Assembly (NCBI RefSeq): GCF_006345805.1
Contig: NC_042998.1
Span: 9,486,001-9,550,000, forward strand
DNA: 64,000 nt
Origin: Octopus sinensis
Lineage: Eukaryota
Direction: 5' to 3'
The notes beneath the pieces were generated by a model that did no database searches, was not told the origin of the DNA, and saw only the letters and a list, made by a program, of their open reading frames with translations. Positions 19,115 through 61,175 of this stretch are shown one piece after another; the first letter of the stretch is position 1; each line of letters opens with the position of its first letter. Position numbers and translations under genes: made by a program.

Positions 19115-19613
19115 GTAAGAAAAGTTATTTCAAAGAACTGTCTTTGTGTGTGTGTGTGTGTGTGTGTGTGTTCAGACTTTTTTAACCCTTTAGTGTTCTG
19201 ATTATTCTATCAAACATAATGCTTATTGATTCACATTGATTTGAATTAATCATGCATTATCTCATATCTTCAAGATCTTGATGGTGTAATTACTTAATGT
19301 AGAATAACATTGTAGAGTAGGTGTGAGGGCCTGGATATGGTCAGCCTGAACATAAAACAGATTAAATATTTTGGCCGGTTTAAATACTAAAGAGTTAAAC
19401 TAGTTATTACAACTTTAATTACACTCAAACAATTTTCAGATAGATAATTTATATTAAACATGCTTATTGTTCATTTTGGCCTGATCTTAATTTAATAGTT
19501 GTATAAATGCAAAGTCTAATTGTGTTTTATAAACAAGCCTCTCTGATATCACCATTTTAGCTTCCTGCTGGAAAATGGCCTCTGATGGTGATTTTAGTCA
19601 AACTTTGGCCACT

Positions 19614-26307: not shown

Positions 26308-26341
<34 letters not shown>

Positions 26342-26438
26342 GCATATATGTATATATATGCATATATATATATATATGTATATATATGCATATATATATA
26401 ATATGTATATATAGCATATATATATATATATATATATA

Positions 26439-26479
<41 letters not shown>

Positions 26480-26565
26480 GCATATATATATATATGTATA
26501 TATGCATATATATATATATATGCATATATATATACATATATATATATATAGTATATGTATATATA

Positions 26566-26602
<37 letters not shown>

Positions 26603-27059
26603 TTAATAAGGGTGAGAGAATTAGATACTAATTTAATAGTATATTTATTCAACACCAAGTGGCCTAGTGCTACGAGAAACCTGGATTATTATAATATTTT
26701 ATAACATATTATAATATTTTTACAAAATAAATATAAGAGAGTGGTCACTATATTGCTCACTCTAGCACCAGTTAATCCAAAAGGTTTCAACCACGAAAAT
26801 ACATGTTTCCCATGAAAGCCAGTACGACTGTTAGTCCGTGTGAGCTAACAGTCGTACTGGCTTTCATGGGAAACATGTATTTTCGTGGTTGAAACCTTTT
26901 GGATTAACTGGTGCTAGAGTGAGCAATATAGTGACCACTCTCTTATATTTATTTTATATTTATTTTATATTATATTATATATATATATGTATATATATGT
27001 ATATATATATATATATGTATATTATGTATATATATATATAATGTATATATATATATATA

Positions 27060-27119
<60 letters not shown>

Positions 27120-27487
27120 GTATATATATATATATATGTATATATATGTATATATATATATATGTATATATATGTATATATATATATATGTATATATATG
27201 TATATATATATAATGTATATATATGTATATAATGTATATATATGTATATATGTATATATGTATATGTATGTATATGTATATATATAATATGTATATATAT
27301 GTATATATATATATTGTATATATATGTATATATATATATATGTATATATATGTATATATATATGTATATATGTATATGTATATGTATATATATATATGTA
27401 TATATATGTATATGTATATGTATATATATGTATATGTATATATTGTATATGTATATATATATATGTATATATGTATATATATATATG

Positions 27488-27522
<35 letters not shown>

Positions 27523-27720
27523 GTATATATATGTATATATATATATATATGTATATATATGTATATATATGTATATATATATATGTATTATATATATGTA
27601 TATATATGTATATATATATATGTATATATATGTATATATATATGTATATATATGTATATATATATATGTATTATATATATATATATAATATATATACACG
27701 TGTGTGTATACATATATATA
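24853..27720. repeat. Giant compound (TA)n/(TATG)n/(TATATG)n microsatellite interrupted by a unique island at about 26599-26955
   Basis: Direct reading. It generates the spurious YI/CM-rich ORFs. Confidence 0.98.
26724..26955. repeat. Perfect palindrome: 111-bp arms with a 10-nt spacer
   Basis: 26724-26834 is the exact reverse complement of 26845-26955. The spacer is TCCGTGTGAG. Confidence 0.95.
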
Positions 27721-28050
27721 TATGTGTGTCTGTGTCCCCCAGCATCACTTGACAACCGATGATAGTGTGTTTACGTCCCCCGACACTTAGCAGTTTGGCA
27801 AAAGAGACCGATAGAATAAGTACTAGGCTTCCAAAGAATAAATCCTGGGGTCGATTTGCTCGACTAAAGGCGGTGCCCCAGCATGGCCACAGTCAAATGA
27901 CTGAAACAAGTAAGTTTCTTGGTAGGCTTTTTTGATGTTTATAAAGGTGTTAAAATGTTTTTACTTTATTCCTTGTGACCTGACAAAAGTTGAAGGATTG
28001 TTTGGCAACTGGTTGTGGTAGCTAGGTATGTGGAACAGAAGGTGATGTAG

Positions 28051-36031: not shown

Positions 36032-36900
36032 AAAAATTCTAAGTCAAGAGCACAGGTTTGTTGATATTTACACGCGACATTTTAAATGTTATTGTTGCAG
36101 TTAATGAAACTATTCATGACAATGTGCCACTATTTCTTATTTTGTGTACCCTTAACGAACTTCGTGCCGAAGAATGAAAATAAAATTTTGCTGCTAATTA
36201 CAACTCATTAGAAAAAAACCCAACAGACATCGTACTTGTAAAATGATGTTGTCACGTGTTCACATTCAAAATGAAGTCGCTGACTTTTGAAACTTTGCAA
36301 AATATTAACGTAGAGGAAAACTATCACTCACGACTAAGTTATTTATTGCAAACAAGTTTAGCTATTACAAATAATTACATAATTACGACGCCATTCTGGT
36401 TTGAAGAGGTAAATGTATACAAAATGAGGAAGAAGCTCTGCAAAAGAAGGAAACCACCCTAAGCCACTGAAGAAATTTGAGTCACTAATTGTAAAAGATT
36501 ACTGAGTATCTACATAAATATAAATTAGCAAATTCTCACGTAAGAGTCGTTTAAAGCTGATCTAACTAAAGATTGCCAACCAGTATTCTACACTGGGAAA
36601 ATAAAAAGAGAATCGGTTGTAAAGCAATTGATATCGACTATTTTCATTCTGCGGCTGGAAAGACGTTCAGACGTGACACTTTGAAGCATAGTCTCTTAAT
36701 ATTGCCGAAGTCATAAAGAAATGAGTCTCCATCTTAAGACAAATGTACATTAAACCAAAACAGGAAATATCGTGGTAAGATGAATTGCTCAGCCTAAAAT
36801 GTAAACACTTTTAAAATACCGAAAGAATTACAGATAAAAGCGTAACTGTTGCATATCATTGCTATTCATGATAAAGATAAACTTTCATGAAAATATATTT

Positions 36901-36916
36901 GGCCCTGAAAAGGGCC
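36901..36916 (-). promoter_or_regulatory. Histone 3' stem-loop GGCCCT-TTTC-AGGGCC (copy 1)
   Basis: Canonical 6-bp stem and 4-nt loop about 30 nt after the stop codon. Confidence 0.95.
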
Positions 36917-36945
36917 GTTGATAGAGAAATTACTACAGCAAGTGT

Positions 36946-37305
36946 TTATTCGCTGCTAGTGTATTTAGTGATTGCCTTCGTACCCTCTGACATTGCGTGT
37001 TTGGCCAATTGGCCAGGAATCAAAAGCCGAACGGCAGTTTGAATCTCTCGACTACTGATGGTCGAACGTCTGTTGTACTGAGCCAAACGACTGGCTTCGG
37101 CAGCGATTCTCTCGAACAAATCGTTAACGAAGCTGTTCATGATGATCATCGCTTTGCTGGAGATTCCAGTATCAGGATGGACCTGTTTCATAACCTTATA
37201 GATATAGTTGGAATAGCTTTCTTTCCTCTTTCTCTTTACTTTCTTGCTTTTCGATCCGGCTAAATTTGGCTTGACGGGTTTCTTGATATCTTCGCTGTCT
37301 GACAT
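36946..37305 (-). CDS. H2B: Divergent histone H2B variant, copy 1 (119 aa, [10 protein letters not shown]...TKYTSSE)
   Basis: Intact intronless histone-fold ORF with ATG at 37303-37305. It has a 3' stem-loop and an upstream TATA/CCAAT/E-box. Confidence 0.96.
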
Positions 37306-40988: not shown

Positions 40989-40990
40989 GT

Positions 40991-42702
40991 AATGCTCTAA
41001 ACAAAAATAATTATAGAGGCATCAAATTGATGGACCAGATGATGTAAAGTGCAGAAAAGGTCATAGCTCAATTAATTAGGAAGAGAATTAGTATAGATGG
41101 GATGCAGTTTGGATTTGTGCCAGAGAGAAGCACCACTGGTGCTATCTTCCTGGTGAGGCAACTGCAGAAGGAATACTTGGCCAAAAATAAACCTCTGTAC
41201 CTGGCTTTTGTTGGAGAAAGCTTTTCTCTTATCTGGTGGGCAATCTGGAAGCTAGGGATAGATGAGTGGTTAGTGAGAGCTGTACAAGCCATGTACAGGG
41301 ATGTTGTTAGTAAGGTGAGAATTGCTAATGAGTATAGCAAGGAGTTTAGTGCACAAATAAGAGTCCACCATGGTTCAGTTCTTAGTCCCCTCTTATTTAT
41401 CATATAACTGAGGAATTTTGACTTGCTGCCCTTGGGAGCTCCTCTATGCCAATGACTTTGTTCTTACTGCTGCATCACTACCAGAACTAGGGAAGGAATT
41501 TCAGGCATAGAACCACAACTGGAATCAAAATGCCTTAGAGTTAATTCAGCAAAGACCAAAGTATTGGTAAGTAGAAAAACAGCCAAGTCACAGACCTCTT
41601 CAGGGAAATGGTTCTGCTCGATATGTAGAAAAAGTGTCAGGAGAAACTCCATAAAGTGTATCCAGTGCAAGCTACGGGCACATAAGAGGTGCAGCAGTAT
41701 CGCTGGAAGACTAACAGAAAAAGTAGTCTTTACATATGGCAGATGTGCAGCTACATTGAACACCAGGAATGTACAAAAATAGACTCCCTTAAATATCAGA
41801 GGGATCCTTAGAAGTAGTAGGCACTTTCTGTTACTTAGGTGAACAAGTTAGTAGTGGGGGAGGTTGATCTGAAAGCATAGCTACTACAATAAGAATAGGC
41901 TGGACAAAGTTCAGAGAGCTACTACCTCTGTTAGTAATGAAGGATCTCTCCCACCTTCAGAGTGAAAGGCAGATTGTACGATGCCTGTGTACGAACAGCT
42001 CTGCTACATGACAGTGAGACATGGACTGTGACTACTTAGAATATGCAAAGGCTTGAAAGAAATGAAGGCGGTATGCACCACTTGATGCATATACGACAGT
42101 GTTAGTGATTTGAGAGAAAAGAACTGGGTACATAAGGCATCAAGTGGAGCGTGCAAGACAGAAGGCTGTGCTGATACTGCCATGTAATGCATATGAATGA
42201 AGACAGTTGAATCAAGAGGTGCCAGTCTCTAATTGTAGAGGGAACATGTGGAAGGGGCAGATCCAGGAAGACGTGGGAGAAAGTGGTGAGAAAGGATCAA
42301 CAAACTTTGGGACTCACAGAGGGGACGACGGGACTGAGACTCCAGGCAGTTTGCTGTGCTTGAGAAGCCACGTCGAGCTAAGTAAAAGCTTGGTTGTCCT
42401 TGCATATAGGTTTGTCCCCTGCGTCCCTCTCCAGCTGAGCAGCCCTAATCTTGTAGGCTCGTAGGTGCTGGTGCCACGTAAAAAGCATCAGTACCAGTGC
42501 CACATGTTGGTGCAGCGTAAAAACACCCAGTACACTCTGTAAAGTGGTTGGCTTTAGGAAGGGCATCCAACCGTAGAAACCATGCCAAGACAGACAAAGA
42601 GCCTGGGCAGTGCTCCAGCTGGCCAGCTCCCATCAAACCCATCCCAGCATGGAAAACAGACATTAATTGATGATGATCATGCAGCTGATGATGATGATGA
42701 TG
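40991..42702 (+). mobile_element. Second, more decayed RTE copy in tandem
   Basis: QFGFVPERSTTGAIF, VHHGSVLSPLLF, the same Cys/His insert and a (GAT)n tail. Confidence 0.85.
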
Positions 42703-42840: not shown

Positions 42841-43437
42841 AAATCAAATCAAAATCGATGAACATCAATGGAATTTGGCACGTAACAAACACCATCCGAT
42901 CGTGGCCATGCTAGCCTTGCCTGGCCTCCGTGCCGGTGGCACATAAAAAACACCATCCGAGCGTGGCCGTTCGCCAGCCTCGTCTGGCACCTGTGTCGGT
43001 GGCACATAAAAAAAACACCATCCGAGCGTGGCCGTTCGCCAGCCTCGTCTGGCACCTGTGAAGGTGGCACGTAAAAAAAACACCATCCGAGCGTGGCCGT
43101 TCGCCAGCCTCGTCTGGCACCTGTGAAGGTGGCACATAAAAAAAACACCATCCGAGCGTGGCCGTTCGCCAGCCTCGTCTGGCACCTGTGTCGGTGGCAC
43201 ATAAAAAAAACACCATCCGAGCGTGGCCGTTCGCCAGCCTCGTCTGGCACCTGTGAAGGTGGCACGTAAAAAGCACCCACTACAGTCTCGGAGTGGTTGG
43301 CGTTAGGAAGGGCATCCAGCTGTAGAAACACTGCCAGATCAGACTGGAGCCTGGTGCAGCCTTCTGGCTTCCCAGACCCCAGTTGAACCGTCCAACCCAT
43401 GCTAGCAAGGAAAACGGACGTTAAACGATGATGATGA
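42841..43437 (+). mobile_element. RTE 3'-end element with internal ~63-bp tandem array and 40-bp target-site duplication
   Basis: Identical direct repeats at 42801-42840 and 43438-43477, and a (GAT)n tail. Confidence 0.88.
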
Positions 43438-44206: not shown

Positions 44207-44485
44207 TCTCATAAATAAGTGACAAACTGAGTAGACACCGCAGGAAATTGTTGTTGACAAACAACAGTAGAAATTGTATTCACCTCAATAGATGTCATTG
44301 ATTGGTTGAAATTGCCGAAATGCAAGAAATTTAACAACAAATATCTTACAAACCGTAGAATTTTCTCAAGAATGCCAAGAGAAAAAGATGTTTTATGTAA
44401 CACATTCTACCAGTTTACGAAGTTTAAAAGTGTTTAGTTACAAAGAAATTATTGTAAAAATCTGCCGGTCAAAATGAAAAGATCC
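44207..44485. mobile_element. One-ended GGATCTTT MITE upstream of H2B copy 2
   Basis: Right TIR ...CCGGTCAAAATGAAAAGATCC. Confidence 0.75.
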
Positions 44486-44906
44486 GAAAGGTTAAATTAC
44501 CAGACAGCTGAAATGAGGCTGGGGGTATGGAAGTATTATTAACAAGAAACCAAGTAAAAGAACTTGAAAAAGAACTTAACAACGTTTATATGTTAGTAAG
44601 GAAGAATATAAACTCAGACAAGAGATATGAACTTGAGAAGAGGTATGGGGGGAAAACTAGAGGACCACGTAATTTTCGAAATACTGTAAGAGGAGGACAT
44701 AGGATAAGAGTACAGGTAAGTGATGTTATCCGATGGGGCGGGTAACATCACTTTCATCTTTCATTTTCACCCTCTCATTTTTATCATACATTTTTTTTTT
44801 TTGGCATTTTATGTCCCCAATGTTTTGTTTGTTTTTATTTATCTTTGTCAGCCCGTCCTGGGTAATAAAGAAATTGCATTCGTAGAGCTTACAGTGATCG
44901 TGGACG

Positions 44907-45260
44907 ATGTCAGACAGCGAAGATATCAAGAAACCCGTGAAGCCAAATTTAGCCGGATCGAAAAGCAAGAAAGTAAAGAGGAAAGAAAGCTATTCCAACT
45001 ACATCTATAAGGTTATGAAACAGGTCCATCCTGATACTGGAATCTCCAACAAAGCGATGATCATCATGAATAGCTTCGTTAACGATTTGTTCGAAAGAAT
45101 CGCTGCCGAAGCCAGTCGTTTGGCTCAGTACAACAGACGTTCGACCATCAGTAGTCGAGAGATTCAAACTGCCGTTCGGCTTTTGATTCCTGGCCAATTG
45201 GCCAAACACGCAATGTCAGAGGGTACGAAGGCAATCACTAAATACACTAGCAGCGAATAA
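44907..45260 (+). CDS. H2B: Divergent histone H2B variant, copy 2 (117 aa)
   Basis: Intact ORF nearly identical to copy 1 (6-bp indel in the basic tail, ISS to ISN). Confidence 0.95.
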
Positions 45261-45289
45261 ACACTTGCTGTAGTAATTTCTCTATCGAC

Positions 45290-45305
45290 GGCCCTTTTCA
45301 GGGCC
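45290..45305 (+). promoter_or_regulatory. Histone 3' stem-loop (copy 2)
   Basis: GGCCCTTTTCAGGGCC. Confidence 0.95.
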
Positions 45306-45943
45306 AAATATGTTTTCATGAAAGTTTATCTTTATGAGTAACAATGGTATGTAACCATAGAATATTTATTCACCTGGATAAAGAGAATCTCTTACCATAC
45401 ATAGAGACATGACAGAGTAGGGTATGACAGGTCCTATTTCATTCACAAATTTTGTTCATATCCTTGTTCACAACATTATTCTTATATTCCACGCAATCGA
45501 GGTAGACTCTGCTTTAATCTTTTTAATACTATGAAATTAACGTACTGGTCATGTACTGTAGTCGATTGTATCCTCCCATAAAATATATCAGAAATTATCT
45601 AATATATTGAACGTCGAGAAAGACTGGTGTGATGGCACCTGAATGAAGCAACTATTCAGAATGTTTTACGTTGCTTCCAAGGAGTATTTTAAAGCTAGTT
45701 GTGCTGAACTGCGTAAGTTATCAAAACATGGATGTTTGGATTTAAGATTAACTACCGTAATAAAGGAATTATTTTCGAAAATATTTTTTATTTGAAGAGA
45801 AGAATAATTTTCAAGATAAGACTGCTTTCGGGCCGAGACAAGTGTAGAAGAGGGGGTAGTCCTTTCAAAATTCTGACATTCGCAGGCCTTCCGTTGTCTA
45901 TGGGAGATTCGGGTCGACATACCAGTTGAATCCTAGACCATTG

Positions 45944-45981
<38 letters not shown>

Positions 45982-46670
45982 AAGTATTATATATACAAAC
46001 ACATGTATGTATACGATACGTACATACGAGAATGTGAATTGAATTTAGTTGTCATGATGTCATAATATCGGTCAAGTTAATTTGGAAAATGTTATAAATT
46101 GGGCTTTGAATTTAAAAAAAGTTCAGTCTTTTCTTACCGTGGGCTGGCGAGTTCACTCAAATATCTAGACTCGTGTTGTGTCAGCATCACCTAGGTTTTT
46201 GGTGCTTATGAAGTCGGCTTTTTCAGCTTCCACTTCTTAAACACCCTCTGTCGATGCTGGTCTGTACCAAAACGTAAATTCAAATTGAACGGTTTTGTTA
46301 CACCACCGTATGCGTTTTAATAAAGCTTACCCGCTTCTACTTGATGTCTGTGTAGTTTCAACCAAAAATAGTCGATATATTCCTATAGAATATTTAATTG
46401 AACACACACTTGTGTACCAGAAAAGCTAGAGTGACATTATACATTCTGTAGAACGTTTTGTCGTCGTAATGTCGTAATCACGCCAAAATGTCAATTTCCA
46501 AATCCTGTTTTCTGATTGGATAAAAATTACCAAACTTTAAACTTCTGAAGCATTTTCCAAACTTTTTCGGGGGCAAGTGAATAGCGTGAAAAATTACATC
46601 AATATTCCAAATTTTAAAATTTCAAGAAGTGAAGCCAAATAGAAAAGATCCCTCCTTTACTTTGTAATGT

Positions 46671-46758
46671 GGATCTTTTCACTTTGACCGGCAGATTTTA
46701 AAAATAATTTTTTGTAACTAAACACTTTTTCCAATGTGGATCTTTTCTGAAAAGATCC
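46671..46758. mobile_element. Internally deleted GGATCTTT MITE with 8-bp TSD TGTAATGT
   Basis: TSD at 46663-70 and 46759-66. It contains fused ends GGATCTTTTC-T-GAAAAGATCC. Confidence 0.75.
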
Positions 46759-46984
46759 TGTAATGTTTCTATGTATGATTGGAGATCTGCTTTCGGAATA
46801 CCTTCGTCTACACCGTCACTAACCTTCAGTTATTTTCTAAAAACGAAAGGTGCCATCATTTGGCCATTCGTACATGTATGCTGACCAATAACCAGTAGAC
46901 GGGACTTGCAGCTATCGACGTGGGATTCCTCAATGTGGTTGCTCAACATGCTAGAAATAACAGCCAAATTACATATACTACTAA

Positions 46985-47369
46985 TCTTTATATATAAAAG
47001 TGAAGTTGTGTGTCTGTCTCATACGATTTAGATTCCTAACTACTCCCACATTTTGCGGGGCAGTTTAACCAAAAGCGGGTATCTTATAATCGTGATTCAT
47101 ATCGAGCCCTTCTGGGTATTAGCGCGCGTCTACGATGAGTCTACGATTTAAAAAAAAATTTACCATAATTTTTTTCCATTTTAATGCATTTTTGGCTATT
47201 ATATAAGGGAAGTAACTCTCTAAAAATGTCTACGATGAGTCAACGATTTAAAAAAAAATTACCATCATTTTTTTCCATTTTTAATGCATTTTTTTTGCTA
47301 TTTCTCTCTAAAAATGCTTATATGGTTATTTCCCTTACTAACCCGAGCAACGCCGGGCGATACTGCTAG
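46985..47369 (+). mobile_element. Non-autonomous Helitron-like element with internal duplication
   Basis: A|TC start, CCCGAGCAACGCCGGG hairpin, CTAG|T end. Confidence 0.8.
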
Positions 47370-47586
47370 TACATTATAAAACAATGGATACATTGAGCAA
47401 TATAATTTTTTTTTAAATACAAACCTACGCGTCTAGAATTTTAAAAAATGTTGCTGCGAAAATCAGAGGATAAATTACTGAATCTGAAAAATAGTCATAT
47501 AAAAATTGTAAAACAATTTCAGATGAATACAATAGTCACATATCATTGCTACTCGTTAAAAGATAAACTTTCGTCAAAATATATTT

Positions 47587-47690
47587 GGCCCTGAAAAGGG
47601 CCGTACATTCAAGAAAGTATAGTACCAAGTATTTATTTGGTAACTACTTTCGTACCCTCAGATAGTGCGTGTTTGTCTTTAAGTGTACCA
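47587..47690 (-). pseudogene. H2B: H2B 3' remnant (KHALSEGTKVVTK*) with intact stem-loop at 47587-47602
   Basis: Minus-strand translation matches the H2B C-terminal helix. The downstream flank resembles that of the pseudogene at 50 kb. Confidence 0.75.
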
Positions 47691-47826
47691 AATACGACAT
47701 TGAGTTTATGAATTGAAGGTGCCTATTCTGCAACCGACAAATATCGCGTGTGTAACAGTGCTTAAATAATGATACCTATAATTTCATAACTAAAAAATCG
47801 TTACTTAGTAAAACTATTAGACTTTG

Positions 47827-48224
47827 GGATCTTTTCGGTTTGAACGGCAGTTTTTCTAGCGGTGTCATATGAAATTGTCACCCATAATTATGACCCTAGT
47901 ATCGATCTATTGTATTTCAATCTCTTTTAGCGTTAGGGGTGGGAGAAAGGTATCTTTTTTTCTTCAGAAATGTAAATAAACCCAATCTGTTTCTTAAACG
48001 AGGGACATATTCATACGGCACAGAATGTTTTCACCTCAATAGGCGTCATTGATTGGTTGAAATTGCCAGAAAAACAACAAATATCTTACAAACTATAGAA
48101 TTTTTTCAATAAAGCCAAAAGAAAAAGATGTTTTATAAACACATTCTACCAGTATACGAAGTTTAAAAGTGTTTAGTTACGTGGAAATTATTTTTAAAAA
48201 CTGCCGGTCAAACCGAATAGTACC
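47827..48224. mobile_element. GGATCTTT-TIR MITE with perfect 8-bp TSD AGACTTTG
   Basis: TSD at 47819-26 and 48225-32; imperfect TIRs. Confidence 0.85.
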
Positions 48225-48343
48225 AGACTTTGTATTCTAAACATTTTCTTTGTCCAGAAATTGTAGCCATAACCAAGTCTACAGTAATATCCTTATGTTT
48301 AGCGCAATCATCGTAGACTGTACTTTTAAACTTTGAAAGAAAA

Positions 48344-49580
48344 TTGACTTCACACATCAGCAAAGTCATGGAACGGATAGTCAGAGGGAAACTAATTGCA
48401 TTCCTTGAAGAAAATAACTTGCTGAATGATACCCAGCGTGGCTTTCGACCAGGTAGGAGCTGCCTGATCCAGATCTTACATTATGACTGGGTGTTGAGGC
48501 GGTTACTCAACAACTCAAATGTGGACGTAATATACCTTGATTTTGCAAAAGCTTTTGACAAGGTAGATCATGGTATGATATTCCACAAACTGCGTGATCT
48601 TGACATAGCTGAAAAACTTGCAGAGTGGTTACATGACTTTCTGAAAGACAGGATTCAGACAGTAGTGTCTAATGGAGCCACCTCTATGAACACACAAATA
48701 GTGAGCGGTGTTCCACAGGGCACTGTCTTGGGACCACTGCTTTTTATAGGGGCTCTATCTGATATGCCCTCAAGTGCACGGATAGCCACCCTTGCAAGCT
48801 ACGCAGATGATACAAAAGTCTCGCAGAAAATCCAGAACCCCAGCGATGTTGCACATCTGCAGCAAGCAGTGTCCAAAACTGAATATGAAACTTACAGGGT
48901 ACACTGGTCCACAGGGAATTTCAATCCCAGAACCTAAATCAGTGAGGGACCTGGGTATAGATATAAGTGATGATACCTCTTTCCAAGTGCACATTACCAG
49001 GATGGCGACAAAGTGCAGACGACTGGCTGGATGGATCCTGAGAACATTCAGAACCAGAAATAAGGAAACCATGATGGTCCTCTGGCGGACATTCGCCCTC
49101 AGCCACCTGGATTACTGCTCACAGCTATGGTCACCCACCAGTGTGAAATTAACAGCGGACCTTGAAGCAATCCAGAGAAGATTCACAAAGAAAATCGTCT
49201 CTTTGCAACTGCTCAGCTACTGGGAAAGGCTGAAACAGCTAGGACTCTACTCCCCGGAGAGAAGGCGGGAGAGGCATGCAGTAATATACATCTGGAAGAT
49301 CCTGGAATGAATTTTCCAGATGTATATTACTGCATGCCTCTCCCGCCTTCTCTCCAGGGAGTAGAGTCCTAGCTGTTTCAGCCTTTCCCAGTAGCTGGAA
49401 GGAACTGTGCCAAATTTTGGCATTGAAAGCTACACCAATGCCAGAACGGGACAACACTGCATAGTGCCAAAGATCCCAGCAACGCCATCGCGCTTCAGGA
49501 CCAGTTACTGCAACAACCTGGGTTTCAGGGGCCCACAGATTTTTAATATTTTCCCAAAGAGCCTGAGGAACCTAGAATCC
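48344..49580 (+). mobile_element. CR1/L2-type LINE RT fragment
   Basis: QRGFRPGRSC, YLDFAKAFDKVDH, SGVPQGTVLGPLLF, YADDTK, LDYCSQLWSP. Disrupted. Confidence 0.9.
49214..49397. repeat. 84-bp fold-back duplication inside the CR1-type LINE
   Basis: 49214-49297 versus 49314-49397, with 1 mismatch. Confidence 0.92.
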
Positions 49581-50155
49581 TATTTCTTGTCAAAATAATT
49601 TTAAAAATTCCCCATTGTGTTATTATGACATCACAATATAGGTAACGTCAAGAAAATGCTATTATTTAGCTTTGATTTCAAGGATTTTTCAATCTCTTCC
49701 CACTGTCTTCGGTGTTTAGAGTCTTGCATAGAGTTAGGCTGTGGAGCTCAACTATATCATGTTTCCAATCAAAGTAGTCCTTTCATTTGCTCATATGCAG
49801 ATGAATAGTGAATAAATTACAAACGACACTTGGAACTATTGACCTGGGAAGGTTGTGGTTGTTCAACATGCTAGAAACAACAGCCAAATTACATTCGAAC
49901 TACGCACGTCCCCAATGTCTTTAAAAATGGAGATATTGGACAATATAATCCAAAATATACAAAATAGACGGGTAGAATTTTTTAAATGAGGATATAAGAA
50001 AATAAATTGCTGAATCTGAAATATGAACAACCATTGAAGAATTCTGAGAGGTTATCAGATAAATATCATCGTTACTCGTTAAAAGATAAATTTTCATGAA
50101 AATATATTTTGGTCCTGAAAAAGGCTGTCGGTCAAGAAAATACAACAGCAAGTGT

Positions 50156-50862
50156 TTATTCGCTGCGTGTATATCTGGTAACTGTCTTCGTACCCTCAGA
50201 TATTGCATGTTTGGCGAATTGACCAGGAAGCAAAGTGGGATAGCACTTTGAATCTCTCGACTACTGATGGTCGAACGTCTGTTGTACTGAGCCAAACGAC
50301 TGGCTTCGACAATGATTCTCTCGAACAAATCGCAACGAAGCTGTTCAAGATGGTTGTTGCTTTTGGATATTCCAGTATCAGGATGGACCTGTTTCATAAC
50401 CTTATAGATATAGTTGGAATAGCTTTTCTTCCTCTTTCTCTTTCTTGCCTTTCAATCTAAATTTGGCTTGACATATTTCTTAATAGCTTCGCGGATCTTT
50501 ACCTTTTGACCGGCAGATTTAGAAAATAATTTTTTGTAACTAAGCACTTTCAAATTTCGCATACTGGTAGAATGTGTCATAAAAAACATCTTTTACTCTT
50601 AGCATTTTTGAGAAAAGTTGTTGACAAACAACAGCAGTAATTTTATTCAGCTGAATACACGTCATTGATCGGTTGAAATTACCGAAATACGACAACTTTA
50701 ACACGAAATAACTTTGTAACCAAACTTTCTCAAAAACGCTAAGAGTAAAAGATGTTTTATATGACACATTCTACCAGTGTACGAAGTTTGAAAGCGTTTA
50801 GTTACAAAAACTTATTTTCTAAATCTGCCGGTCAAAAGGTAAAGATCCCTTTGCTCTGACAT
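50156..50862 (-). pseudogene. H2B: H2B pseudogene with frameshifts, a degenerate stem-loop (50111-50126) and a MITE inserted at 50493-50848 just after the start codon
   Basis: Alignable to the intact copies along its length. ATG at 50860-62; small deletions in ISSKAM and FVNDL; TATA at 50922-27 and CCAAT at 50993-97 upstream. Confidence 0.9.
50493..50848. mobile_element. GGATCTTT-TIR MITE inside the H2B pseudogene
   Basis: About 50-bp TIRs; flanking CTTCGC/CTTTGC duplication. Confidence 0.88.
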
Positions 50863-51298
50863 TATTTACAATAACTGCAAACTATACGAATACATTGCCG
50901 ATCTCCGACAGCTAACTCTTATTTATAGTTAGCTAGTAGACTCCATAGGGAAGTCACTGTTTGGCGGGCTTGACTGTTTTTGCTTCAATTTCATTGGTTA
51001 AAATTGTTTCTCGCGTCAGCATCCTACTTGGAGCTACGTGAAGTCTAATTTGCTTCCACTAAACTATTTTCGATGATAGCTTAAATGATAGATCTGTCAC
51101 GTCTGGTAGCAAGAAAGGAAAGCTACATTCGTTCATTTCGTAACGGTCTTGAGTTTCCAGTAAACTGTATTCATTTTGTAAAATAATTATGAGGGATATT
51201 TTTCTGTTTGGCTACACGCGTGGAAATTGTAAAGTTCAATGATTACTTTACAAAACTACACCAATACGCCAAAAATGAAATCAATTGGAACAAAAACT

Positions 51299-51951
51299 GA
51301 AACGAAAATCCGAAAAAAAAAAAAATAGTGCAACAGGTGTAAAAAAATGTGTAGGAAATGATTAGGAAAAAAAAAAAGAATGCGCGCAAAGCAATGGGAG
51401 GATGGCGAGAGGACTTCGGAAAATTCACAAGATCCGAGTTTTTCCATCATAACTTTTACGAAAATGGCTTTGAAATCTTATACAAATATCTTTCAAAGGC
51501 ATAGATTACGATTACGATATACACAAATATATACGATTATATATATATATACACAAATACGGACGTAGTAGAAAACAGCTACTTAGTTCTGTTCACTACT
51601 CTGATTGACTGGTATTGGCGCAATTTGTCTCTTACTCTATTGCGCGCCAATATGCAACCCAACCAATCGCAGCCTTCTGATAAGGTCACGTGAGACAGTC
51701 TCTTCTAAACTTCCAGTGAGCCGATAGATTTTACCCACAAATTTCTTTGTAATTGTAATGAAAGCCTTTTCAAAGGTATTTCTATACAATTTCATTGCTA
51801 AAAGTTATGAGGGAAAAACTCGGATCTTGTGAATTTTCCGAGGTCTTCTCCCCAGCCTCCCGTTGCTTTGCGTACATTTTTTTTTTTCATTTTCGTTTCC
51901 TACACATTTTTTATACACCCATTGCACCTTTTTTTTTCTGATTTTCGTTTC
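51299..51951. repeat. Diverged ~210-bp inverted arms with a ~230-bp spacer
   Basis: Shared core GGAAAATTCACAAGATCCGAGTTTTTCC is inverted at both sides. Confidence 0.8.
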
Positions 51952-52474
51952 TGGATCAAGTTGTAAACATTAACTGAAAATGGCAATATATATGACAGGC
52001 ATTGCTGGTATGGGCAGTTAAGAAGATTTTTTCGCGACCACATAGTTCTGAGTTCAATTCATGGCATCTTGGGAAAATGTTTTTTTTTTATTATAAACTC
52101 AAAACAATCAGTTTATCATATCTTGTGAGTGGAATTTGATTCGCAGAAATTCCAGAAGTACACCGTATGTGTGTGTGATGTGTGCTGCTGTCATAAAAGC
52201 GTCATCCGAGGTGGACGGTGCTCTCCTACCCTGCCAGCTTTGTTACTGTCCAAAATATATCTTGAGTTGTTGTAAACGGACAGAAATAAACGTAGCCTGG
52301 GTAGTTTTAGTTCATCTAAAAAAGATATTTAATCATTGTGAGTGCACAACCACTGAACAGTGCAATTGTAAGATGCAAAACCAATGTTACCTTTCTGATT
52401 GGTTACTTGCCATAATCAGGAGTATAAGTACTCAACACTATAAGAAGTATAACCATTGAAATTTTCTTTTAGAG

Positions 52475-54420
52475 CAGTGGTTCCTAACCTTTTTACTACC
52501 ACATCTCCCCTAGGAATTTGTCCATCTCTCCATGCCCCCCACCCCACCTGCAACTTTGAATAAAATTCCCTCCCAGATTTTAAAGAAAATGTAAAATATG
52601 TTTTTAGTCTTTTTATTGAATATGAATTAGACACATTATACAAAATATGAATAATTTTAAATATAATCACATTATACAAAAAATGAGATACTTGACACTG
52701 CTTCTTAGCTACAAAATCTTGAATGTGTGGTTGAATGCCAGAGAGCACACAATGTAAGTCCCTTTCAATGTTCAGCATGTTTCTGTTCTTGGTCTTGACA
52801 GCAACAAGCGTGGAAAATGCAGCTTCACAAAGATACGTGGATCCAAACACAGCTAAAATCCAAAGAGCCTGCTGTGAGATCAGAGGATAAACAGGAAGAC
52901 ACTTGATCCAGAACATTTCAAGATCCAGTTCTTTGAAGTCTTCCATAGTTGGGGAGTTGAACTTCAGCTCAAGAAACTCCTCTTGCACTTCATCCAAACC
53001 ATCAATTATTTCACACTGAAATGGGTTCCTGATGAATTTCCAAACTTCCCGCTTTTCATCTATATCTGGGAAGTATCTGATGAATTCTGTTTTCAAGACA
53101 GAGGAGTGATTATCTGTTTCTTCAACTCAGAATCAAGGTTACTGTGAATGAGAGCAGAATCCAAGTAACTAAAACTGATTGTATTTCCCTGCTGAATTCG
53201 ACATTTTCAGAGGTCGAGTTTGGCCATGAAGGTTTGAATGGTGCCGTGGTACGTGAGAATGTTGTTTTTCCCTTGTAGTTTAAGGTTGAAAGAATTTATG
53301 CTTCAAAGATGTCCACCAGGTAAGCTAGAGACAGCTGAAAGCCTTCAGATTGGAACTTATCATTGAGATCTGCTTTCTGTTGCAAATCTAGAAATATTGC
53401 TACTTCTTGTAGTTCATAAAGCCATCCAAGCATGTTCCCCTTTGATAGCCTTTGTACATTTATGTGAAAAAGCAATGCTTTATGTTCAGATTATCTTTAT
53501 GCAACAGTTTGAAAAGATGACTGTTTAAGGTTCTACCTTTAAAAAAGTTGATAACCTTGATAGCCATGTTCAGGACATTTCTCATTTCAGTAGGTAAGGT
53601 TCTGGATGCCAAGGCTTCACGATGAAGTATGCAGTGTGTACCTGCAGCAGATAGATTTTTTTTTCTCTCTCACCCTAGTAATGAATCCAGACTGCAAACC
53701 AAGCCTGGCTGGAGCTCCATCAATATGCATCCCTACCAGAGAATCCCACAAAAGTTGGTTTTCCTGAAAGAAGTTTGATACATCACAAAAAATAGCTGCT
53801 GCTATTGTACAACTATCCATAGAGTGACAGAACAGTATTTTCTCTTTTACACAGTTGCCTGAGACAAAACGAATATATTACCAGTAGCTGAGAACCCTGA
53901 GTGATGTCAGTCATTTCATCACACTGGATGGCAAAAACAGGAGAATCCTCTAACTTGGTTGAGAATTTGATCTTTGGTGTCTTGAGACTGTATTGTTTGA
54001 TAGTGAAATCAGGGAAAGCTTGTTTGCACTATCTTTCCCCAGAACAAGTTCTGCTGCACGGAGTAGACTTGGTTTTATGAGAGACTCTCCAATGTTATGG
54101 CTCTTCTTACTCTTTGCAATCAACATGGTGATCTCACAGCCACTGAAATTTGTTGCCTTAATGCCCTACTGACGCCTAATTTAGCTTGCTTCAAGGAATG
54201 TCTTTTTGTTTCAAAGAATGCCTTGGGCTTCTCTGCAAGAGCAGGACGTGTTGTCCTCAAGTGGTGTTCCAAGCATGAGGGCCACATTCCATCATTGCTT
54301 AAGGTTTTGTAACATATCACACAATGGGGGACTTCTGTATCATCCTTTTGGGAAGACACAGAGCTAAATCGAATATATTCGTCAAGATACTTCCATTTCT
54401 TTGGACTCATTGTAAATTAT
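52475..54420 (-). mobile_element. Decayed hAT (Buster/Charlie, ZBED8/SCAND3-like) transposon
   Basis: BED finger CVICYKTLSN...HH, hATC motif FGSTYLCEAAFS, TIR CAGTGGTTCCTAACCTTTT at 52475 preceded by an nnnTAnnn site. Frameshifted, and the other TIR was not found. Confidence 0.88.
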
Positions 54421-55287
54421 TTGATGTGCAATGGAAAAAACAGAAATGTGGACAAAGATAAGGCAAGTGTAAGGTAATGTCAAGGCCCAAGTTAGAATGC
54501 TTGGAGTAAAAAGTTCTGAAAAAAATTTATAACAAAACATTTGGAATAAAAGTTAAATTAAAAGTTATATGGAAAATTTGAACAATAAAATATTGTATTT
54601 ATTTGTATGAAAATATATTAAAAAAAGTTTCTTTAAAAAAGAAAAGATTTTGCATAGCTTTTAGTTTTATCTAGTACTTTCTGTAACATTTAAATCTGAA
54701 TTTTAGTTTAACATTTGGCTTTATATTATAATTTCATTTCTTACAAAAAAACTTACTATATTTTTAACATAAGCATTTGATATTAAAAAGTTTGGTTTTA
54801 TTGTTAAAATCTTTTATTTTTCCAATCTGTGTTTTAATTTTTTGAGACTTTATTAAATTGAGCAATTACATACTTTTTGTTTTATTTCCTATTTTTAAGT
54901 ATATCATACTTTTCATTTTGCTAAAATTTTACAGAATACAAACAGACCAAATGATTATTGAAAACAAATTTTGAAATTGGCTAAATCAATACTGTATTTT
55001 TTTATTATTAAACTTTAGGATACAAATTCTATTTTTATATTTATGAATGTATTTATTTCAAATGTGATAATCTTTGGCACTTATTCTATTCTATATACAA
55101 ATTTATTCAACACTTATAATTATTTACAAAACTGATACAGTGCACCGGGAATTAAAGGCCATTGCGAAATGAACGAATTTAGTTTTCCTTTTTGGCTACA
55201 AGACTTGACAAAACTATCATTTAAGAATCACGTGGGAAATAGTTTAGTGGAAGTAAACTAAATTCAGGTAGCTTAAAGTAAACTGAT

Positions 55288-55370
55288 CACGTGAGAAACA
55301 ATTTTAACCAATGAAATTCAAGCGCGCCAAACAAGTGACTTGCTTCTGGAGTCTGCTGACAACTATAAAA
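55288..55370 (+). promoter_or_regulatory. H2B copy 3 promoter: CACGTG (55288-93), CCAAT (55308-12), TATAAAA (55364-70)
   Basis: Motifs are shared with copy 1. About 280 bp of 5' flank is alignable to the pseudogene flank. Confidence 0.78.
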
Positions 55371-55427
55371 AGCGGCAGTTGTTGGAGACTGGCAAAGCAT
55401 TCGTAGAGTTTGCAGTCAACGTGAATA

Positions 55428-55787
55428 ATGTCAGACAGCGAAGATATCAAGAAACCCGTCAAGCCAAGTTTAGCCAGATCGAAAAGCAAGAAAGTAAAGA
55501 GAAAGAGGAAAGAAAGCTATTCCAACTATATCTATAAGGTTATGAAACAGGTCCATCCTGATACTGGAATCTCCAATAAAGCGATGATCATCATGAACAG
55601 CTTCGTTAACGATTTGTTCGAGAGAATCGCTGCCGAAGCCAGTCGTTTGGCTCAATACAACAGACGTTCGACCATCAGTATTCGAGAGATTCAAACTGCC
55701 GTTCGGCTTTTGATTCCTGGTCAATTGGCCAAACACTCAATATCTGAGGGTACGAAAGCAGTTACTAGATACACTTGCAGTGAATAA
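55428..55787 (+). CDS. H2B: Divergent histone H2B variant, copy 3 (119 aa, ends [10 protein letters not shown])
   Basis: Intact ORF with promoter motifs and stem-loop. Confidence 0.95.
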
Positions 55788-55814
55788 ACACTTGGTGTGT
55801 TTCCTGAAATCATC

Positions 55815-55830
55815 GGCCCTTTTCAGGGCC
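55815..55830 (+). promoter_or_regulatory. Histone 3' stem-loop (copy 3)
   Basis: GGCCCTTTTCAGGGCC. Confidence 0.95.
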
Positions 55831-55909
55831 AATTATATTTTCATGAAAGTTTATATCTTTATCATGAATAGCTATGATAAACAACCGATATGTTTCTAAC
55901 TAATTTTTT

Positions 55910-56038
55910 GGATCTTTCGGTAAAGCCAAGAGAAAAAGATGATGTTTTATAAACACACTCTACGAGTGTACGAAGTTTAAAATCTTTTAGTTACATAGAA
56001 ATTATTTTTAAAAACTGCCGTTCAAACCGAAAAGATCC
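55910..56038. mobile_element. Short GGATCTTT MITE about 80 bp downstream of the H2B copy 3 stem-loop
   Basis: Both termini are present. Confidence 0.8.
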
Positions 56039-57797: not shown

Positions 57798-58437
57798 GGA
57801 TCTTTTAGGGTTGAACGGCAGTTTTTTCTAGCGGTGTCATATGAAATTGTCACCCATAATTATGACCCTAGTATCGATCTATTGCATTTCAATCTGTTTT
57901 AGGGTTAGGGTGGGGGGAAGGGTATAATTTTTTCTTCAGAAATGTAAATAAACCCAATCTGTTTCTTAAACGAGGGACATATTCATACGGCACAGAATGT
58001 TTTCAACTCAATAGACGTTGGTTGAAATTGAAGAAAAAAAGTAACAAATATCTTACAAACTATAGAATTTTCTCAATAAAGCCAAGAGAAAAAGATGTTT
58101 TATAAACATATTCTACCAGTATACGAAGTTTAAAAGTTTAGTTTTAGGGTGGGGGGAAGGGTATCTTTTTTTCTTCACAAATGTAAATAAACCCAATCTG
58201 TTTCTTAAACGAGGGACATATTCATACGGCACATAATGTTGTTTACCTAAATGGACGTCATTGATTGGTTGAAATTGAAGGAAAAAAAAAACAACAAATA
58301 TCTTACAAACTATAGAATTTTCTCAAAGCCAGGAGAAAAAGATGTTTTATAAATACATTCTACCAGTATACGAAGTTTAAAATTTTTTAGTTTCCTAGAA
58401 ATTATGTTAAAAACTGCCGTTCAAACCGAAAAGATCC
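57798..58437. mobile_element. GGATCTTT-TIR MITE with internal tandem duplication
   Basis: TSD ATGATTTG/ATGTTTTG (1 mismatch). Confidence 0.85.
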
Positions 58438-60071: not shown

Positions 60072-60610
60072 AAGATAGATTGATAGATACAATTGAATGG
60101 GCAAACAAGAATATGAGACACTACCTAGAGCTTTTTTTTTTGATAAACCTGGAACTTGTTCTATCAGTTTCTTCTTGTCAAACTAGTAAGTTATGGGGAT
60201 GTAAATAAACGAACAGCAGTTGTGAAGCAGTGATGAGGGAGAAACACAGAGACAAAGGCACACACAAACACTTACATATATACATACATATATATATACG
60301 ATATGATTGATTTCTTTCAGTATCTGTCTACAAAATCCACTGACAAGGCTCTGGTTGGTCTGAGGCTATAGCAGAAGACACATGCAAAGTCATCACACAA
60401 TGGTACTGAACCTAGGACCATGTCTTTTGGAACTAAGTTTCTTACCACACAGCCACACCTGCACCTATGTGTGTGTGTGTATGTGTATATATATATATGT
60501 GTACATATTACATGTACATGTATATATATACACATATACATGTATACATATACATCTATATCTATACATATACAGCTATACATATACATCTATACATGTA
60601 TATATATATA

Positions 60611-60653
<43 letters not shown>

Positions 60654-61175
60654 AAGATAGATTGATAGATACAATTGAATGGGCAAACAAGAATATGAGA
60701 CACTACCTAGAGCTTTTTTTTTTGATAAACCTGGAACTTGTTCTATCAGTTTCTTCTTGTCAAACTAGTAAGTTATGGGGATGTAAATAAACGAACAGCA
60801 GTTGTGAAGCAGTGATGAGGGAGAAACACAGAGACAAAGGCACACACAAACACTTACATATATACATACATATATATATATACGATATGATTGATTTCTT
60901 TCAGTATCTGTCTACAAAATCCACTGACAAGGCTCTGGTTGGTCTGAGGCTATAGCAGAAGACACATGCAAAGTCATCACACAATGGTACTGAACCTAGG
61001 ACCATGTCTTTTGGAACTAAGTTTCTTACCACACAGCCACACCTGCACCTATGTGTGTGTGTGTATGTGTATATATATATATGTGTACATATTACATGTA
61101 CATGTATATATATACACATATACATGTATACATATACATCTATATCTATACATATACAGCTATACATATACATCT

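What the first reader, a model, noticed from the sequence alone, without database searches (positions are those of the whole stretch)
55428..55787. H2B sublineage lacking the monoubiquitylation lysine (K120R)
Seen: copy 3 ends [10 protein letters not shown] and the pseudogene ends [10 protein letters not shown], while copies 1 and 2 keep K ([10 protein letters not shown]). Copy 3 and the pseudogene also share about 280 bp of 5' flank. Known: H2B K120ub (RNF20/40) supports H3K4/H3K79 methylation and elongation, and K120R is the standard experimental null. Inference: a natural non-ubiquitylatable H2B with an intact promoter and stem-loop exists alongside a K120-retaining paralog.
Basis: partly seen in the sequence, partly recalled or inferred. 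Interest (0 to 1): 0.72.

Follow-up and report, generated by a model that had tools for sequence, protein, structure and literature searches.

The report
Octopus H2B variant lacking ubiquitylation lysine
One intact gene in an octopus-specific cluster of divergent histone H2B genes really does carry arginine where H2B is normally mono-ubiquitylated, but mammals have similar lysine-less H2B variants and nothing here shows that the change is selected or the gene expressed.

Summary
The window is Octopus sinensis chromosome CM016860.1. Copy 3 (55428-55787, +) is an intact 119-aa H2B ending [10 protein letters not shown]. Its codon 114 (AGA, 55767-55769) aligns without gaps to human H2B K120. The neighbouring pseudogene also has AGA, in O. 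sinensis and in an independent O. vulgaris assembly, so R120 is inherited and not an error.

- These are not canonical H2B genes. They form an H2B-only, Octopus-specific variant cluster of three intact genes, one pseudogene and one relic. All intact copies have an acidic short N-tail, E105Q in the acidic patch and K125E. Canonical K120 H2B sits elsewhere in an H4-H3-H2A-H2B unit.
- Gene conversion homogenises the histone fold. The last 48 nt, which hold K120R, diverge at about the flank rate, with 5 nonsynonymous and 4 synonymous changes, not distinguishable from neutral.
- Two of the three members of the lineage to which copy 3 belongs are dead.
- Copy 3 keeps a CCAAT block, TATA box, stem-loop and downstream element. 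Expression and a copy-3 orthologue could not be checked.
- Primate H2B.W1 (E105Q plus no K120) and H2B.N are precedents.

Verdict: a real, modestly interesting new member of a known kind.

The parts
55428..55787 (+). Copy 3: intact intronless H2B-variant CDS, 119 aa plus stop, ending [10 protein letters not shown]
   Evidence: ORF list. Pfam Histone PF00125, E=3e-21. Gapless alignment to solved H2B chains.
55767..55769 (+). Codon 114, AGA (Arg), equivalent to human H2B K120. Copies 1 and 2 and canonical octopus H2B have AAA.
55722..55724 (+). Codon 99, CAA (Gln), equivalent to acidic-patch residue E105 of human H2B. Gln in all three intact copies and in the pseudogene.
   Evidence: PGQLAKH against canonical PGELAKH
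55288..55370 (+). Copy 3 promoter: CACGTG at 55288-55293; 27-nt CCAAT block at 55306-55332, identical to copy 1's; TATAAAA at 55364-55370
55810..55854 (+). Histone 3' stem-loop (GGCCCTTTTCAGGGCC, 55815-55830) followed by the downstream TATATTTTCATGA element
   Evidence: Rfam RF00032 at 34.0 bits against a gathering score of 34. The downstream element is shared with canonical octopus H2B.
36946..37305 (-). Copy 1: intact K120-retaining variant (119 aa, [10 protein letters not shown]; protein P0017)
36877..36921 (-). Copy 1 histone stem-loop
   Evidence: Rfam 36.5 bits
37397..37423 (-). Copy 1 promoter CCAAT block, 27/27 identical to copy 3's
   Evidence: Also identical in O. vulgaris copy 1.
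44907..45260 (+). Copy 2: intact K120-retaining variant (117 aa; protein P0121). It lacks the shared promoter; homology to the other copies starts about 30 nt upstream of the ATG. Stem-loop at 45290-45305.
47540..47680 (-). 5'-truncated H2B relic (KHALSEGTKVVT...) with an intact stem-loop at 47587-47602. A 15-nt deletion removes the K/R codon, so it says nothing about K or R.
50156..50862 (-). Pseudogene, the closest relative of copy 3. It ends [10 protein letters not shown] (AGA at 50174-50176) and has an in-frame stop, frameshifts and a degenerate stem-loop.
50493..50848 (.). 356-bp MITE with 136-nt inverted arms, inserted after codon 3 of the pseudogene. The insertion is shared with O. vulgaris.

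Best explanation
Copy 3 is an intact paralogue in an Octopus-specific, H2B-only cluster of divergent H2B variant genes that keep replication-dependent-type 3' signals. The cluster evolves by birth and death of copies, with gene conversion across the histone fold. K120R (AAA to AGA) arose once, before the copy 3/pseudogene duplication and before the O. sinensis/O. vulgaris split. It survives in the C-terminal approximately 48 nt that conversion does not reach. If copy 3 is expressed, its protein would enter nucleosomes as an H2B that Rad6-Bre1 (RNF20/40) cannot mono-ubiquitylate at the canonical site. It also has a weakened acidic patch (E105Q) and no K125. The most likely evolutionary reading is a tolerated, near-neutral substitution in a redundant, already divergent variant, not a demonstrably selected 'ubiquitin-blind' specialisation. 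Shown here: the sequence, homology of the position, inheritance, cluster anatomy, the gene-conversion pattern and the regulatory motifs. Inferred only: expression, nucleosome incorporation, loss of ubiquitylation and any downstream effect on H3K4/K79 methylation.
For: - The window is identical to O. sinensis CM016860.1.
- R114 aligns to human K120.
- AGA is shared by copy 3 and by the pseudogene in two species. The MITE insertion and the broken stem-loop are also shared between species, so the pseudogene died before speciation.
- With canonical H2B DNA as outgroup, AAA (K) is ancestral. GTT and TCT are also ancestral and are retained by copy 3.
- The variant family (P0017, P0021, P0121-P0124) was found only in Octopus. 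All full-length members have PGQLAKH, and all but O. bimaculoides P0124 (C-terminal K) end in E.
- Canonical H2B lies in an H4-H3-H2A-H2B unit. The window holds no H2A, H3 or H4.
- Copy 1 against copy 2 gives dN/dS 0.04. Copy 2 between species shows 0 nonsynonymous and 4 synonymous changes, so the family is constrained.
- Of 16 nucleotide differences between copies 1 and 3, 9 fall in the last 48 nt (P=4e-5). That segment is 81% identical, similar to the flanks at 76-83%; the first 309 nt are 97.7% identical.
- Gene conversion is seen directly. In the histone fold, the O. vulgaris pseudogene is 96.9% identical to copy 3 but only 85.4% identical to its own O. sinensis orthologue.
- The promoter block is 27/27 identical in copies 1 and 3 and in O. 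vulgaris copy 1.
- Copy 3's stem-loop passes the Rfam gathering score.
Against: - There is no expression evidence of any kind. Copy 3 is not annotated as its own gene; it appears only inside a chimeric copy 2 + copy 3 model, P0005.
- Copy-3-specific changes (about 4 nonsynonymous to 2-4 synonymous) and the last 16 codons (5 to 4, P=0.13) do not reject neutrality.
- An intact ORF may partly reflect repair by gene conversion and not selection on copy 3 itself.
- The dead relic also keeps a perfect stem-loop, so stem-loop integrity is weak evidence of function.
- Near-neutrality of K120R is itself inferred from few sites.
Confidence: 0.5

Rival explanations
1. Selected specialisation. Copy 3 would be a dedicated 'ubiquitin-blind' H2B variant that shields the chromatin it occupies from H2Bub1-dependent H3K4/H3K79 methylation, for example in the germline, convergent with primate H2B.W1.
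For: - The E105Q plus no-K120 combination matches H2B.W1 (PMC11514470).
- Copy 3 keeps an intact promoter block, TATA box, stem-loop and downstream element while the spacer sequence around them has diverged.
- R is a conservative, charge-keeping replacement that preserves nucleosome structure; an engineered K120R nucleosome has been solved, PDB 9e3d.
- R120 is rare among H2Bs.
- The copy 3 CDS has no indels, whereas the copy 3/pseudogene 5' flank alignment carries 22 gap positions at 76% identity.
Against: - The segment holding R120 diverges at the flank rate with 5 nonsynonymous to 4 synonymous changes.
- The other R120 copy became a pseudogene before speciation.
- There are no expression data and no orthologue.
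- Other copy-3-specific changes (S91I, A110S, S123C in human numbering) look unpatterned.
Confidence: 0.2
2. Copy 3 is silent or on its way to becoming a pseudogene. The ORF looks intact only because it is short and its histone-fold part is periodically overwritten by gene conversion from functional copies. K120R would then be one of several drift changes.
For: - Gene conversion demonstrably rewrites even a dead copy.
- Two of the three members of the lineage to which copy 3 belongs are dead.
- dN/dS is higher for copy 3 (0.14-0.32) than for copy 1 against copy 2 (0.04).
- Copy 3 is not annotated as its own gene, and its exact protein is absent from the 15-billion-protein collection.
- The stem-loop score sits exactly at the Rfam threshold.
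Against: - The 27-nt promoter block is perfectly conserved against a 76% flank background. I estimate about a 2% chance of such a run from the identity.
- The TATA box, stem-loop and downstream element are all intact, whereas the true pseudogene has lost its stem-loop.
- There is no stop or frameshift even in the unconverted tail.
- Over the whole copy 1/copy 3 path, nonsynonymous changes are fewer than neutral expectation (9 of 16, P=0.03).
Confidence: 0.25
3. R120 is a sequencing or assembly error in the O. sinensis assembly.
For: Copy 3 itself is seen in only one assembly. The O. vulgaris locus that could be fetched ends about 740 bp short of it.
Against: - The same AGA codon is present in the paralogous pseudogene of O. 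sinensis and in its orthologue in the independent O. vulgaris assembly.
- The codon is not in a homopolymer.
- Neighbouring derived changes (GTT, TCT, ATA) go together with it.
Confidence: 0.03

Closest known systems
Primate testis-specific H2B.W1 (H2BFWT)
   Same: It is a lineage-specific H2B variant that has Gln at the E105 acidic-patch position and lacks the K120 equivalent (PMC11514470). H2B.W genes carry a histone stem-loop in the 3' UTR (PMC8857922).
   Different: The origins are independent (mammalian X-linked against a cephalopod cluster). H2B.W is about 50% identical to canonical H2B in the histone fold and has long N- and C-terminal extensions (PMC11742582). Octopus copy 3 is about 83% identical to canonical H2B in the fold, with a short acidic N-tail and a normal-length C-terminus. 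Expression and nucleosome destabilisation are shown for H2B.W1 but are unknown here.
Mammalian H2B.N
   Same: It is a germline H2B variant without K120 (PMC11742582, PMC8857922).
   Different: H2B.N loses K120 by truncation of the whole alpha-C helix and acidic-patch residues, and may not act in nucleosomes. Copy 3 keeps alpha-C and has a point substitution.
Canonical replication-dependent octopus H2B (P0309, in an H4-H3-H2A-H2B unit, locus L004)
   Same: It is intronless and has the 3' stem-loop plus the TATATTTTCATGA downstream element. It shares the histone fold and the KRKRKESYS motif.
   Different: Canonical H2B has K120, E105, K125 and a long basic N-tail, and it is paired divergently with H2A. 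The variants form an H2B-only cluster with their own CCAAT/TATA promoter, which is absent from L004.
Engineered H2B K120R (for example PDB 9e3d)
   Same: It has the same substitution at the same position and is the standard non-ubiquitylatable mutant (established knowledge).
   Different: It is a laboratory mutant of canonical H2B. Here the change is natural and sits on a variant background with E105Q and K125E.
Sporadic natural K120R copies in multicopy H2B families (for example Ochlerotatus camptorhynchus 'histone H2B-like', P0273)
   Same: It is a full-length H2B model ending KAVTRYTSSK.
   Different: It is otherwise canonical, its status is unknown, and it is unrelated to the octopus cluster.

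Membership tests
Histone H2B (core histone fold) | Pfam Histone (PF00125) match above the gathering score | tested here: met
   76.3 bits against a cut-off of 26.4, E=3e-21
Histone H2B (core histone fold) | Collinear, gapless alignment to solved nucleosomal H2B through alpha1-alphaC | tested here: met
   Residues 19-118 align to 2pyo_D residues 22-121 without gaps, E=1e-49
Replication-dependent (canonical-type) histone gene | Intronless ORF with a 3' histone stem-loop (Rfam RF00032) in place of a poly(A)-type end | tested here: met
   34.0 bits against a gathering score of 34, exactly at threshold. The 16-nt stem-loop is perfect.
Replication-dependent (canonical-type) histone gene | Downstream element after the stem-loop shared with bona fide canonical genes of the same species | tested here: met
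   TATATTTTCATGA follows the stem-loop in the canonical O. sinensis H2B and in copies 1 and 3; copy 2 has one mismatch. Binding to U7 was not tested.
Replication-dependent (canonical-type) histone gene | Located in a repeated unit with H2A, H3 and H4, and encoding the canonical protein | tested here: not met
   No H2A, H3 or H4 in the 64 kb window, whereas canonical H2B is in an H4-H3-H2A-H2B unit. The protein is about 83% identical to canonical H2B over the last 81 residues, which hold the fold, and its N-tail is unalignable.
Replication-dependent (canonical-type) histone gene | S-phase-coupled expression | not testable with these tools
   No expression data are reachable
Substrate of Rad6-Bre1 / RNF20-RNF40 at H2B K120 | Lysine at the K120-equivalent position | tested here: not met
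   Arg (AGA) in copy 3. Lys (AAA) in copies 1 and 2 and in canonical H2B.
Substrate of Rad6-Bre1 / RNF20-RNF40 at H2B K120 | Intact nucleosome acidic patch for docking of the Bre1 RING domain | tested here: inconclusive
   H2B E105 is Gln and E113 is kept. The Bre1 contacts quoted in the passages read are H2A E61, D90 and E92 (PMC10959955), so the effect of E105Q is unknown.
H2B.W (mammalian) | E105Q-equivalent change and absence of K120 | tested here: met
   Q99 and R114 in copy 3, compared with PMC11514470
H2B.W (mammalian) | Orthology or shared descent, long divergent N- and C-terminal tails, about 50% identity in the fold | tested here: not met
   The family was found only in Octopus. It has a short N-tail, a normal C-terminus and about 83% fold identity. 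The resemblance is convergent, not membership.
H2B.W (mammalian) | Testis-restricted expression | not testable with these tools
   No RNA or protein data are reachable
Histone pseudogene | Stop codon, frameshift, insertion or loss of regulatory signals | tested here: not met
   Copy 3 has none of these. The neighbour at 50156-50862 has all of them.

The most novel reading that the evidence does not exclude
Octopus has independently evolved a small family of stem-loop-bearing H2B variants with a weakened acidic patch (E105Q), an acidic short N-tail with a CK2-like motif, and no K125. Within it, a maintained paralogue has also lost the K120 ubiquitin acceptor. That would be a cephalopod counterpart of primate testis H2B.W1. 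It would imply that 'patch-weakened, ubiquitin-blind' H2B is a recurrent solution, probably for germline chromatin, and that loss of K120 follows once the variant is uncoupled from Bre1-dependent signalling.
Probability: 0.2. Interest if true: 0.6.

Novelty: new member of a known kind. Interest (0 to 1): 0.4.

Why it matters
H2B K120 is among the most conserved modification sites in eukaryotes, and H2B variants are the least studied histone variants, especially outside mammals and plants. A natural K120R sitting beside K120-retaining sister genes on the same E105Q background is a ready-made paired comparison. It could show what H2B ubiquitylation and the H2B part of the acidic patch contribute. 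It is also a possible case of convergence with primate H2B.W1. If copy 3 proves silent or drifting, the locus still shows clearly how birth-and-death evolution plus partial gene conversion shape a young histone variant cluster.

Tried and rejected
- Retrieving the O. vulgaris orthologue of copy 3 failed. The loci around copies 1 and 2 (L002, L003) end at window-equivalent position 54687, about 740 bp short of copy 3, and no downstream gene call was available to anchor another fetch.
- The O. bimaculoides variant proteins P0021 and P0124 are not on record in the contig index, so no O. bimaculoides DNA was obtained.
- A 44-aa C-terminal query returned only short fragments.
- An 81-aa query found no further octopus R120 model.
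- I first read the relic at 47.6 kb as 'VVTK-stop', which would have been evidence for ancestral K inside copy 3's lineage. The alignment shows a 15-nt deletion across that codon, so I dropped the inference.
- Copy 2 as a retrocopy was rejected. Its homology starts near the predicted transcription start, but it extends about 95 nt past the stop codon, beyond the mRNA cleavage site.
- Pairwise dN/dS was rejected as a clean test of selection, because gene conversion is demonstrable.
- I looked for a stated Bre1 contact with H2B E105 or E113 in two structure papers. No match for E105/E113 turned up in either paper; the contacts quoted in the passages read from the human complex paper are H2A residues. 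The idea that E105Q already blocks Bre1 therefore remains speculation.
- Sequencing error was rejected.

Full report
**Observation.** The ORF at 55428-55787 (+) encodes a 119-aa protein, [38 protein letters not shown]...[17 protein letters not shown]. It matches Pfam Histone PF00125 (E=3e-21). It aligns without gaps to solved nucleosomal H2B chains from the KRKRKESY motif to the C-terminus. Residue numbers here plus 6 give human H2B numbers. R114 (AGA, 55767-55769) is therefore human K120, Q99 is E105, E107 is E113, and the terminal E119 is K125. Copy 1 (36946-37305, -) and copy 2 (44907-45260, +) end [10 protein letters not shown]. The pseudogene (50156-50862, -) ends [10 protein letters not shown]. 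The shared 5' flank of copy 3 and the pseudogene is about 315-334 bp at 76% identity, a little more than the 280 bp quoted.

**Source and independent confirmation.** The window is identical over 28,986 bases to Octopus sinensis GCA_006345805.1 chromosome CM016860.1. The syntenic O. vulgaris region (OX597815.1, loci L002 and L003) is 94-96% identical. It contains copy 1, copy 2, the relic and the pseudogene. The O. vulgaris pseudogene has the same MITE insertion after codon 3, the same degenerate stem-loop and the same AGA codon (KTVTRYTNSE). K-to-R therefore predates both the copy 3/pseudogene duplication and the species split, and it is not a sequencing error. With canonical O. sinensis H2B DNA as outgroup, AAA (Lys) is ancestral. 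Copy 3 also retains the ancestral GTT (Val118) and TCT (Ser112), which copies 1 and 2 have changed. The copy 3 lineage and the copy 1/2 lineage are thus sister lineages.

**What the genes are.** They are not the organism's canonical H2B genes. Canonical O. sinensis H2B (P0309...[23 protein letters not shown]) lies in an H4-H3-H2A-H2B unit on another scaffold. The window holds H2B-like sequences only, with no H2A, H3 or H4. They sit among reverse-transcriptase, hAT and mariner fragments and MITEs. The full-length family members were retrieved only from O. sinensis, O. vulgaris and O. bimaculoides (P0017, P0021, P0121, P0122, P0124). They share these features:
- a short N-tail that begins with the acidic run SDSED
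- Q at the H82 position, R at the K85 position, and I at the G60 position (S in canonical octopus H2B)
- Q at acidic-patch position E105
- E instead of K at the C-terminus, except O. bimaculoides P0124, which ends in K

The Argonauta H2B that was retrieved is canonical. The family is under purifying selection. Copy 1 against copy 2 gives dN/dS 0.04, and copy 2 has 0 nonsynonymous and 4 synonymous differences between species. All intact copies keep a perfect 16-nt histone stem-loop. Copies 1 and 3 also carry intact the TATATTTTCATGA element that follows the canonical gene's stem-loop; copy 2 has one mismatch in it. These are variant proteins with replication-dependent-type mRNA 3' signals.

**Cluster anatomy.** The pseudogene has a MITE insertion, a stop codon, frameshifts and a broken stem-loop. 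The relic (about 47540-47680, -) is 5'-truncated and keeps a perfect stem-loop. Codon states (GTT ACC, TCT) group the relic and the pseudogene with copy 3, so only one of the three members of this lineage is alive. A 15-nt deletion removes the relic's K/R codon. Copies 1 and 3 share an E-box, a CCAAT block and a TATA box, and the pseudogene carries a modified version of the same promoter. The 27-nt CCAAT block is 27/27 identical in O. sinensis copies 1 and 3 and in O. vulgaris copy 1, and it is absent from the canonical locus. The surrounding flank is only 76% identical. I estimate about a 2% chance of such a run in 160 nt. Copy 2 lacks this promoter; its homology starts about 30 nt before the ATG.

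**How the sequences evolve.** Copies 1 and 3 differ at 16 of 357 nt, 9 nonsynonymous and 7 synonymous, giving dN/dS 0.32. Nine of the 16 differences lie in the last 48 nt (P=4e-5). That segment is 81% identical, like the flanks at 76-83%, while the first 309 nt are 97.7% identical. Synonymous sites in the fold are far too similar for the age implied by the flanks, which points to gene conversion. Conversion is also seen directly. In fold codons 40-103, the O. vulgaris pseudogene is 96.9% identical to O. sinensis copy 3, including the copy-3-specific Ile85. It is only 85.4% identical to its own O. sinensis orthologue, although their flanks are 92-100% identical. This also hints indirectly that O. 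vulgaris has, or had, a copy-3-like donor. Three consequences follow:
- An intact histone fold in copy 3 is weaker evidence of selection than it looks.
- K120R sits in the segment that conversion does not reach.
- In that segment the 5 nonsynonymous and 4 synonymous changes cannot be distinguished from neutral (P=0.13). The same holds for the copy-3-specific branch overall, at about 4 nonsynonymous to 2-4 synonymous.

Over the whole copy 1/copy 3 path, nonsynonymous changes are fewer than neutral expectation (P=0.03). Copy 3 has no indel or stop codon even in the unconverted tail.

**Mechanism.** Established knowledge says that Rad6-Bre1 (RNF20/40) docks on the acidic patch and transfers ubiquitin to H2B K120 (PMC10959955). 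K120R abolishes this, and an engineered K120R nucleosome has been solved (PDB 9e3d). Inference: a copy 3 protein, if made, would assemble into nucleosomes, because its fold and its H2A/H4-contact regions are close to canonical. Those nucleosomes could not carry H2Bub1 at the canonical site and so could not stimulate Dot1L or COMPASS through it. There is also no K125. K108, K116 and the K34 equivalent remain. S112, which lies near Rad6 in the Bre1 model, is retained. Whether E105Q already lowers Bre1 activity on all family members is unknown. The Bre1 contacts quoted in the passages read are H2A residues.

**Comparison with known variants.**
- Primate testis-specific H2B.W1 has exactly this pair of features, Q at E105 and no K120 equivalent (PMC11514470).
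- H2B.W genes carry stem-loops (PMC8857922).
- H2B.N lacks K120 through truncation (PMC11742582).

The octopus genes are not members of these mammalian families. Their distribution, tail architecture and 83% fold identity show independent origin. They are a convergent, new member of the general kind 'lineage-specific H2B variant without the ubiquitin acceptor'. K120R also occurs sporadically elsewhere, in a mosquito H2B-like model (P0273) and a metagenomic fragment (P0234). That is 2 non-octopus cases among 328 retrieved C-termini.

**Verdict.** The strongest points for a live gene are the conserved promoter block, the intact processing signals and the intact tail. The strongest points against special significance are neutral-like evolution of the segment holding R120, the two dead members of the same lineage, the absence of expression or orthologue data, and the existing mammalian precedents. 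Copy 3 is not annotated as its own gene. It appears only in a chimeric O. sinensis model (P0005) that joins the C-terminal halves of copies 2 and 3.

**Limits.** The O. vulgaris copy 3 region lies just beyond the retrievable locus, no O. bimaculoides DNA was reachable, and there are no RNA or protein data.

Noticed in passing
It is a 5'-truncated relic (KHALSEGTKVVT...) with a perfect histone stem-loop (47587-47602) and a 15-nt deletion at the K120 codon. It is 97% conserved in O. vulgaris.
   Followed up: yes
window 50493-50848; other copies at about 19598-20151, 44250-44485, 46671-46728, 48030-48212, 55922-56038 and 58066-58437: A MITE family of 356 bp with 136-nt inverted arms that are 91% complementary. 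One copy interrupts the pseudogene after codon 3, and that insertion is shared with O. vulgaris. Other copies lie about 420 bp upstream of copy 2 and about 135 bp downstream of copy 3.
   Followed up: partly
window 44870-44906, upstream of copy 2: Copy 2 lacks the CCAAT/TATA promoter shared by copies 1 and 3; its homology begins only about 30 nt before the ATG. Yet it is the most constrained copy, with a protein identical in O. sinensis and O. vulgaris. Its promoter is unidentified. An octamer-like AATTGCAT sits at about -30.
   Followed up: partly
L001 10001-20773, equal to window 45015-55787: The O. sinensis gene model 'late histone H2B.L4-like' (P0005, 150 aa) is a chimera. It joins the C-terminal part of copy 2 to the C-terminal part of copy 3 across about 10 kb. 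Copy 3 has no gene model of its own.
   Followed up: yes
L002 15626-15874 (-) compared with window 50233-50490 (-): The orthologous pseudogenes are only 85% identical in the histone-fold region, although their flanks are 92-100% identical. The O. vulgaris one is 97% identical to copy 3 there and has a 96-bp deletion. This is a recent gene-conversion tract into a dead gene.
   Followed up: yes
window 24860-27723: A 2.9-kb degenerate (TA)n/(CA)n microsatellite. It produces the long artefactual 'YIYIYI' ORFs on both strands.
   Followed up: no
window 42887-43272: A 65-bp tandem repeat with 6 copies at 93% identity. It underlies overlapping artefactual ORFs on the minus strand.
   Followed up: no
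window 39321-41407 and 48344-49310: Fragments of non-LTR retrotransposons: an RVT_1 reverse transcriptase (E=5e-21) and a PHD-like zinc-finger ORF, between the H2B copies.
   Followed up: partly
window 52416-54410 (-): A remnant of a hAT-family transposase. One ORF has the Dimer_Tnp_hAT domain (E=2e-6). A second ORF upstream of it on the minus strand (54120-54410), Cys/His-containing, has no Pfam match. The remnant lies between the pseudogene and copy 3.
   Followed up: partly
window 60317-60589 and 60901-61173 (-); also 57898-58379: A tandem duplication with a 584-bp offset gives two identical 90-aa ORFs. A separate 239-bp repeat with 2 copies starts with TTAGGG-like motifs.
   Followed up: no
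L004 1903-6378 (O. sinensis VCDQ01000926.1): The canonical histone unit H4(-) H3(+) H2A(-) H2B(+), with a 262-bp divergent H2A-H2B intergenic region. The canonical stem-loop is GGTCCTTTTAAGGGCC, against GGCCCTTTTCAGGGCC in the variants.
   Followed up: partly
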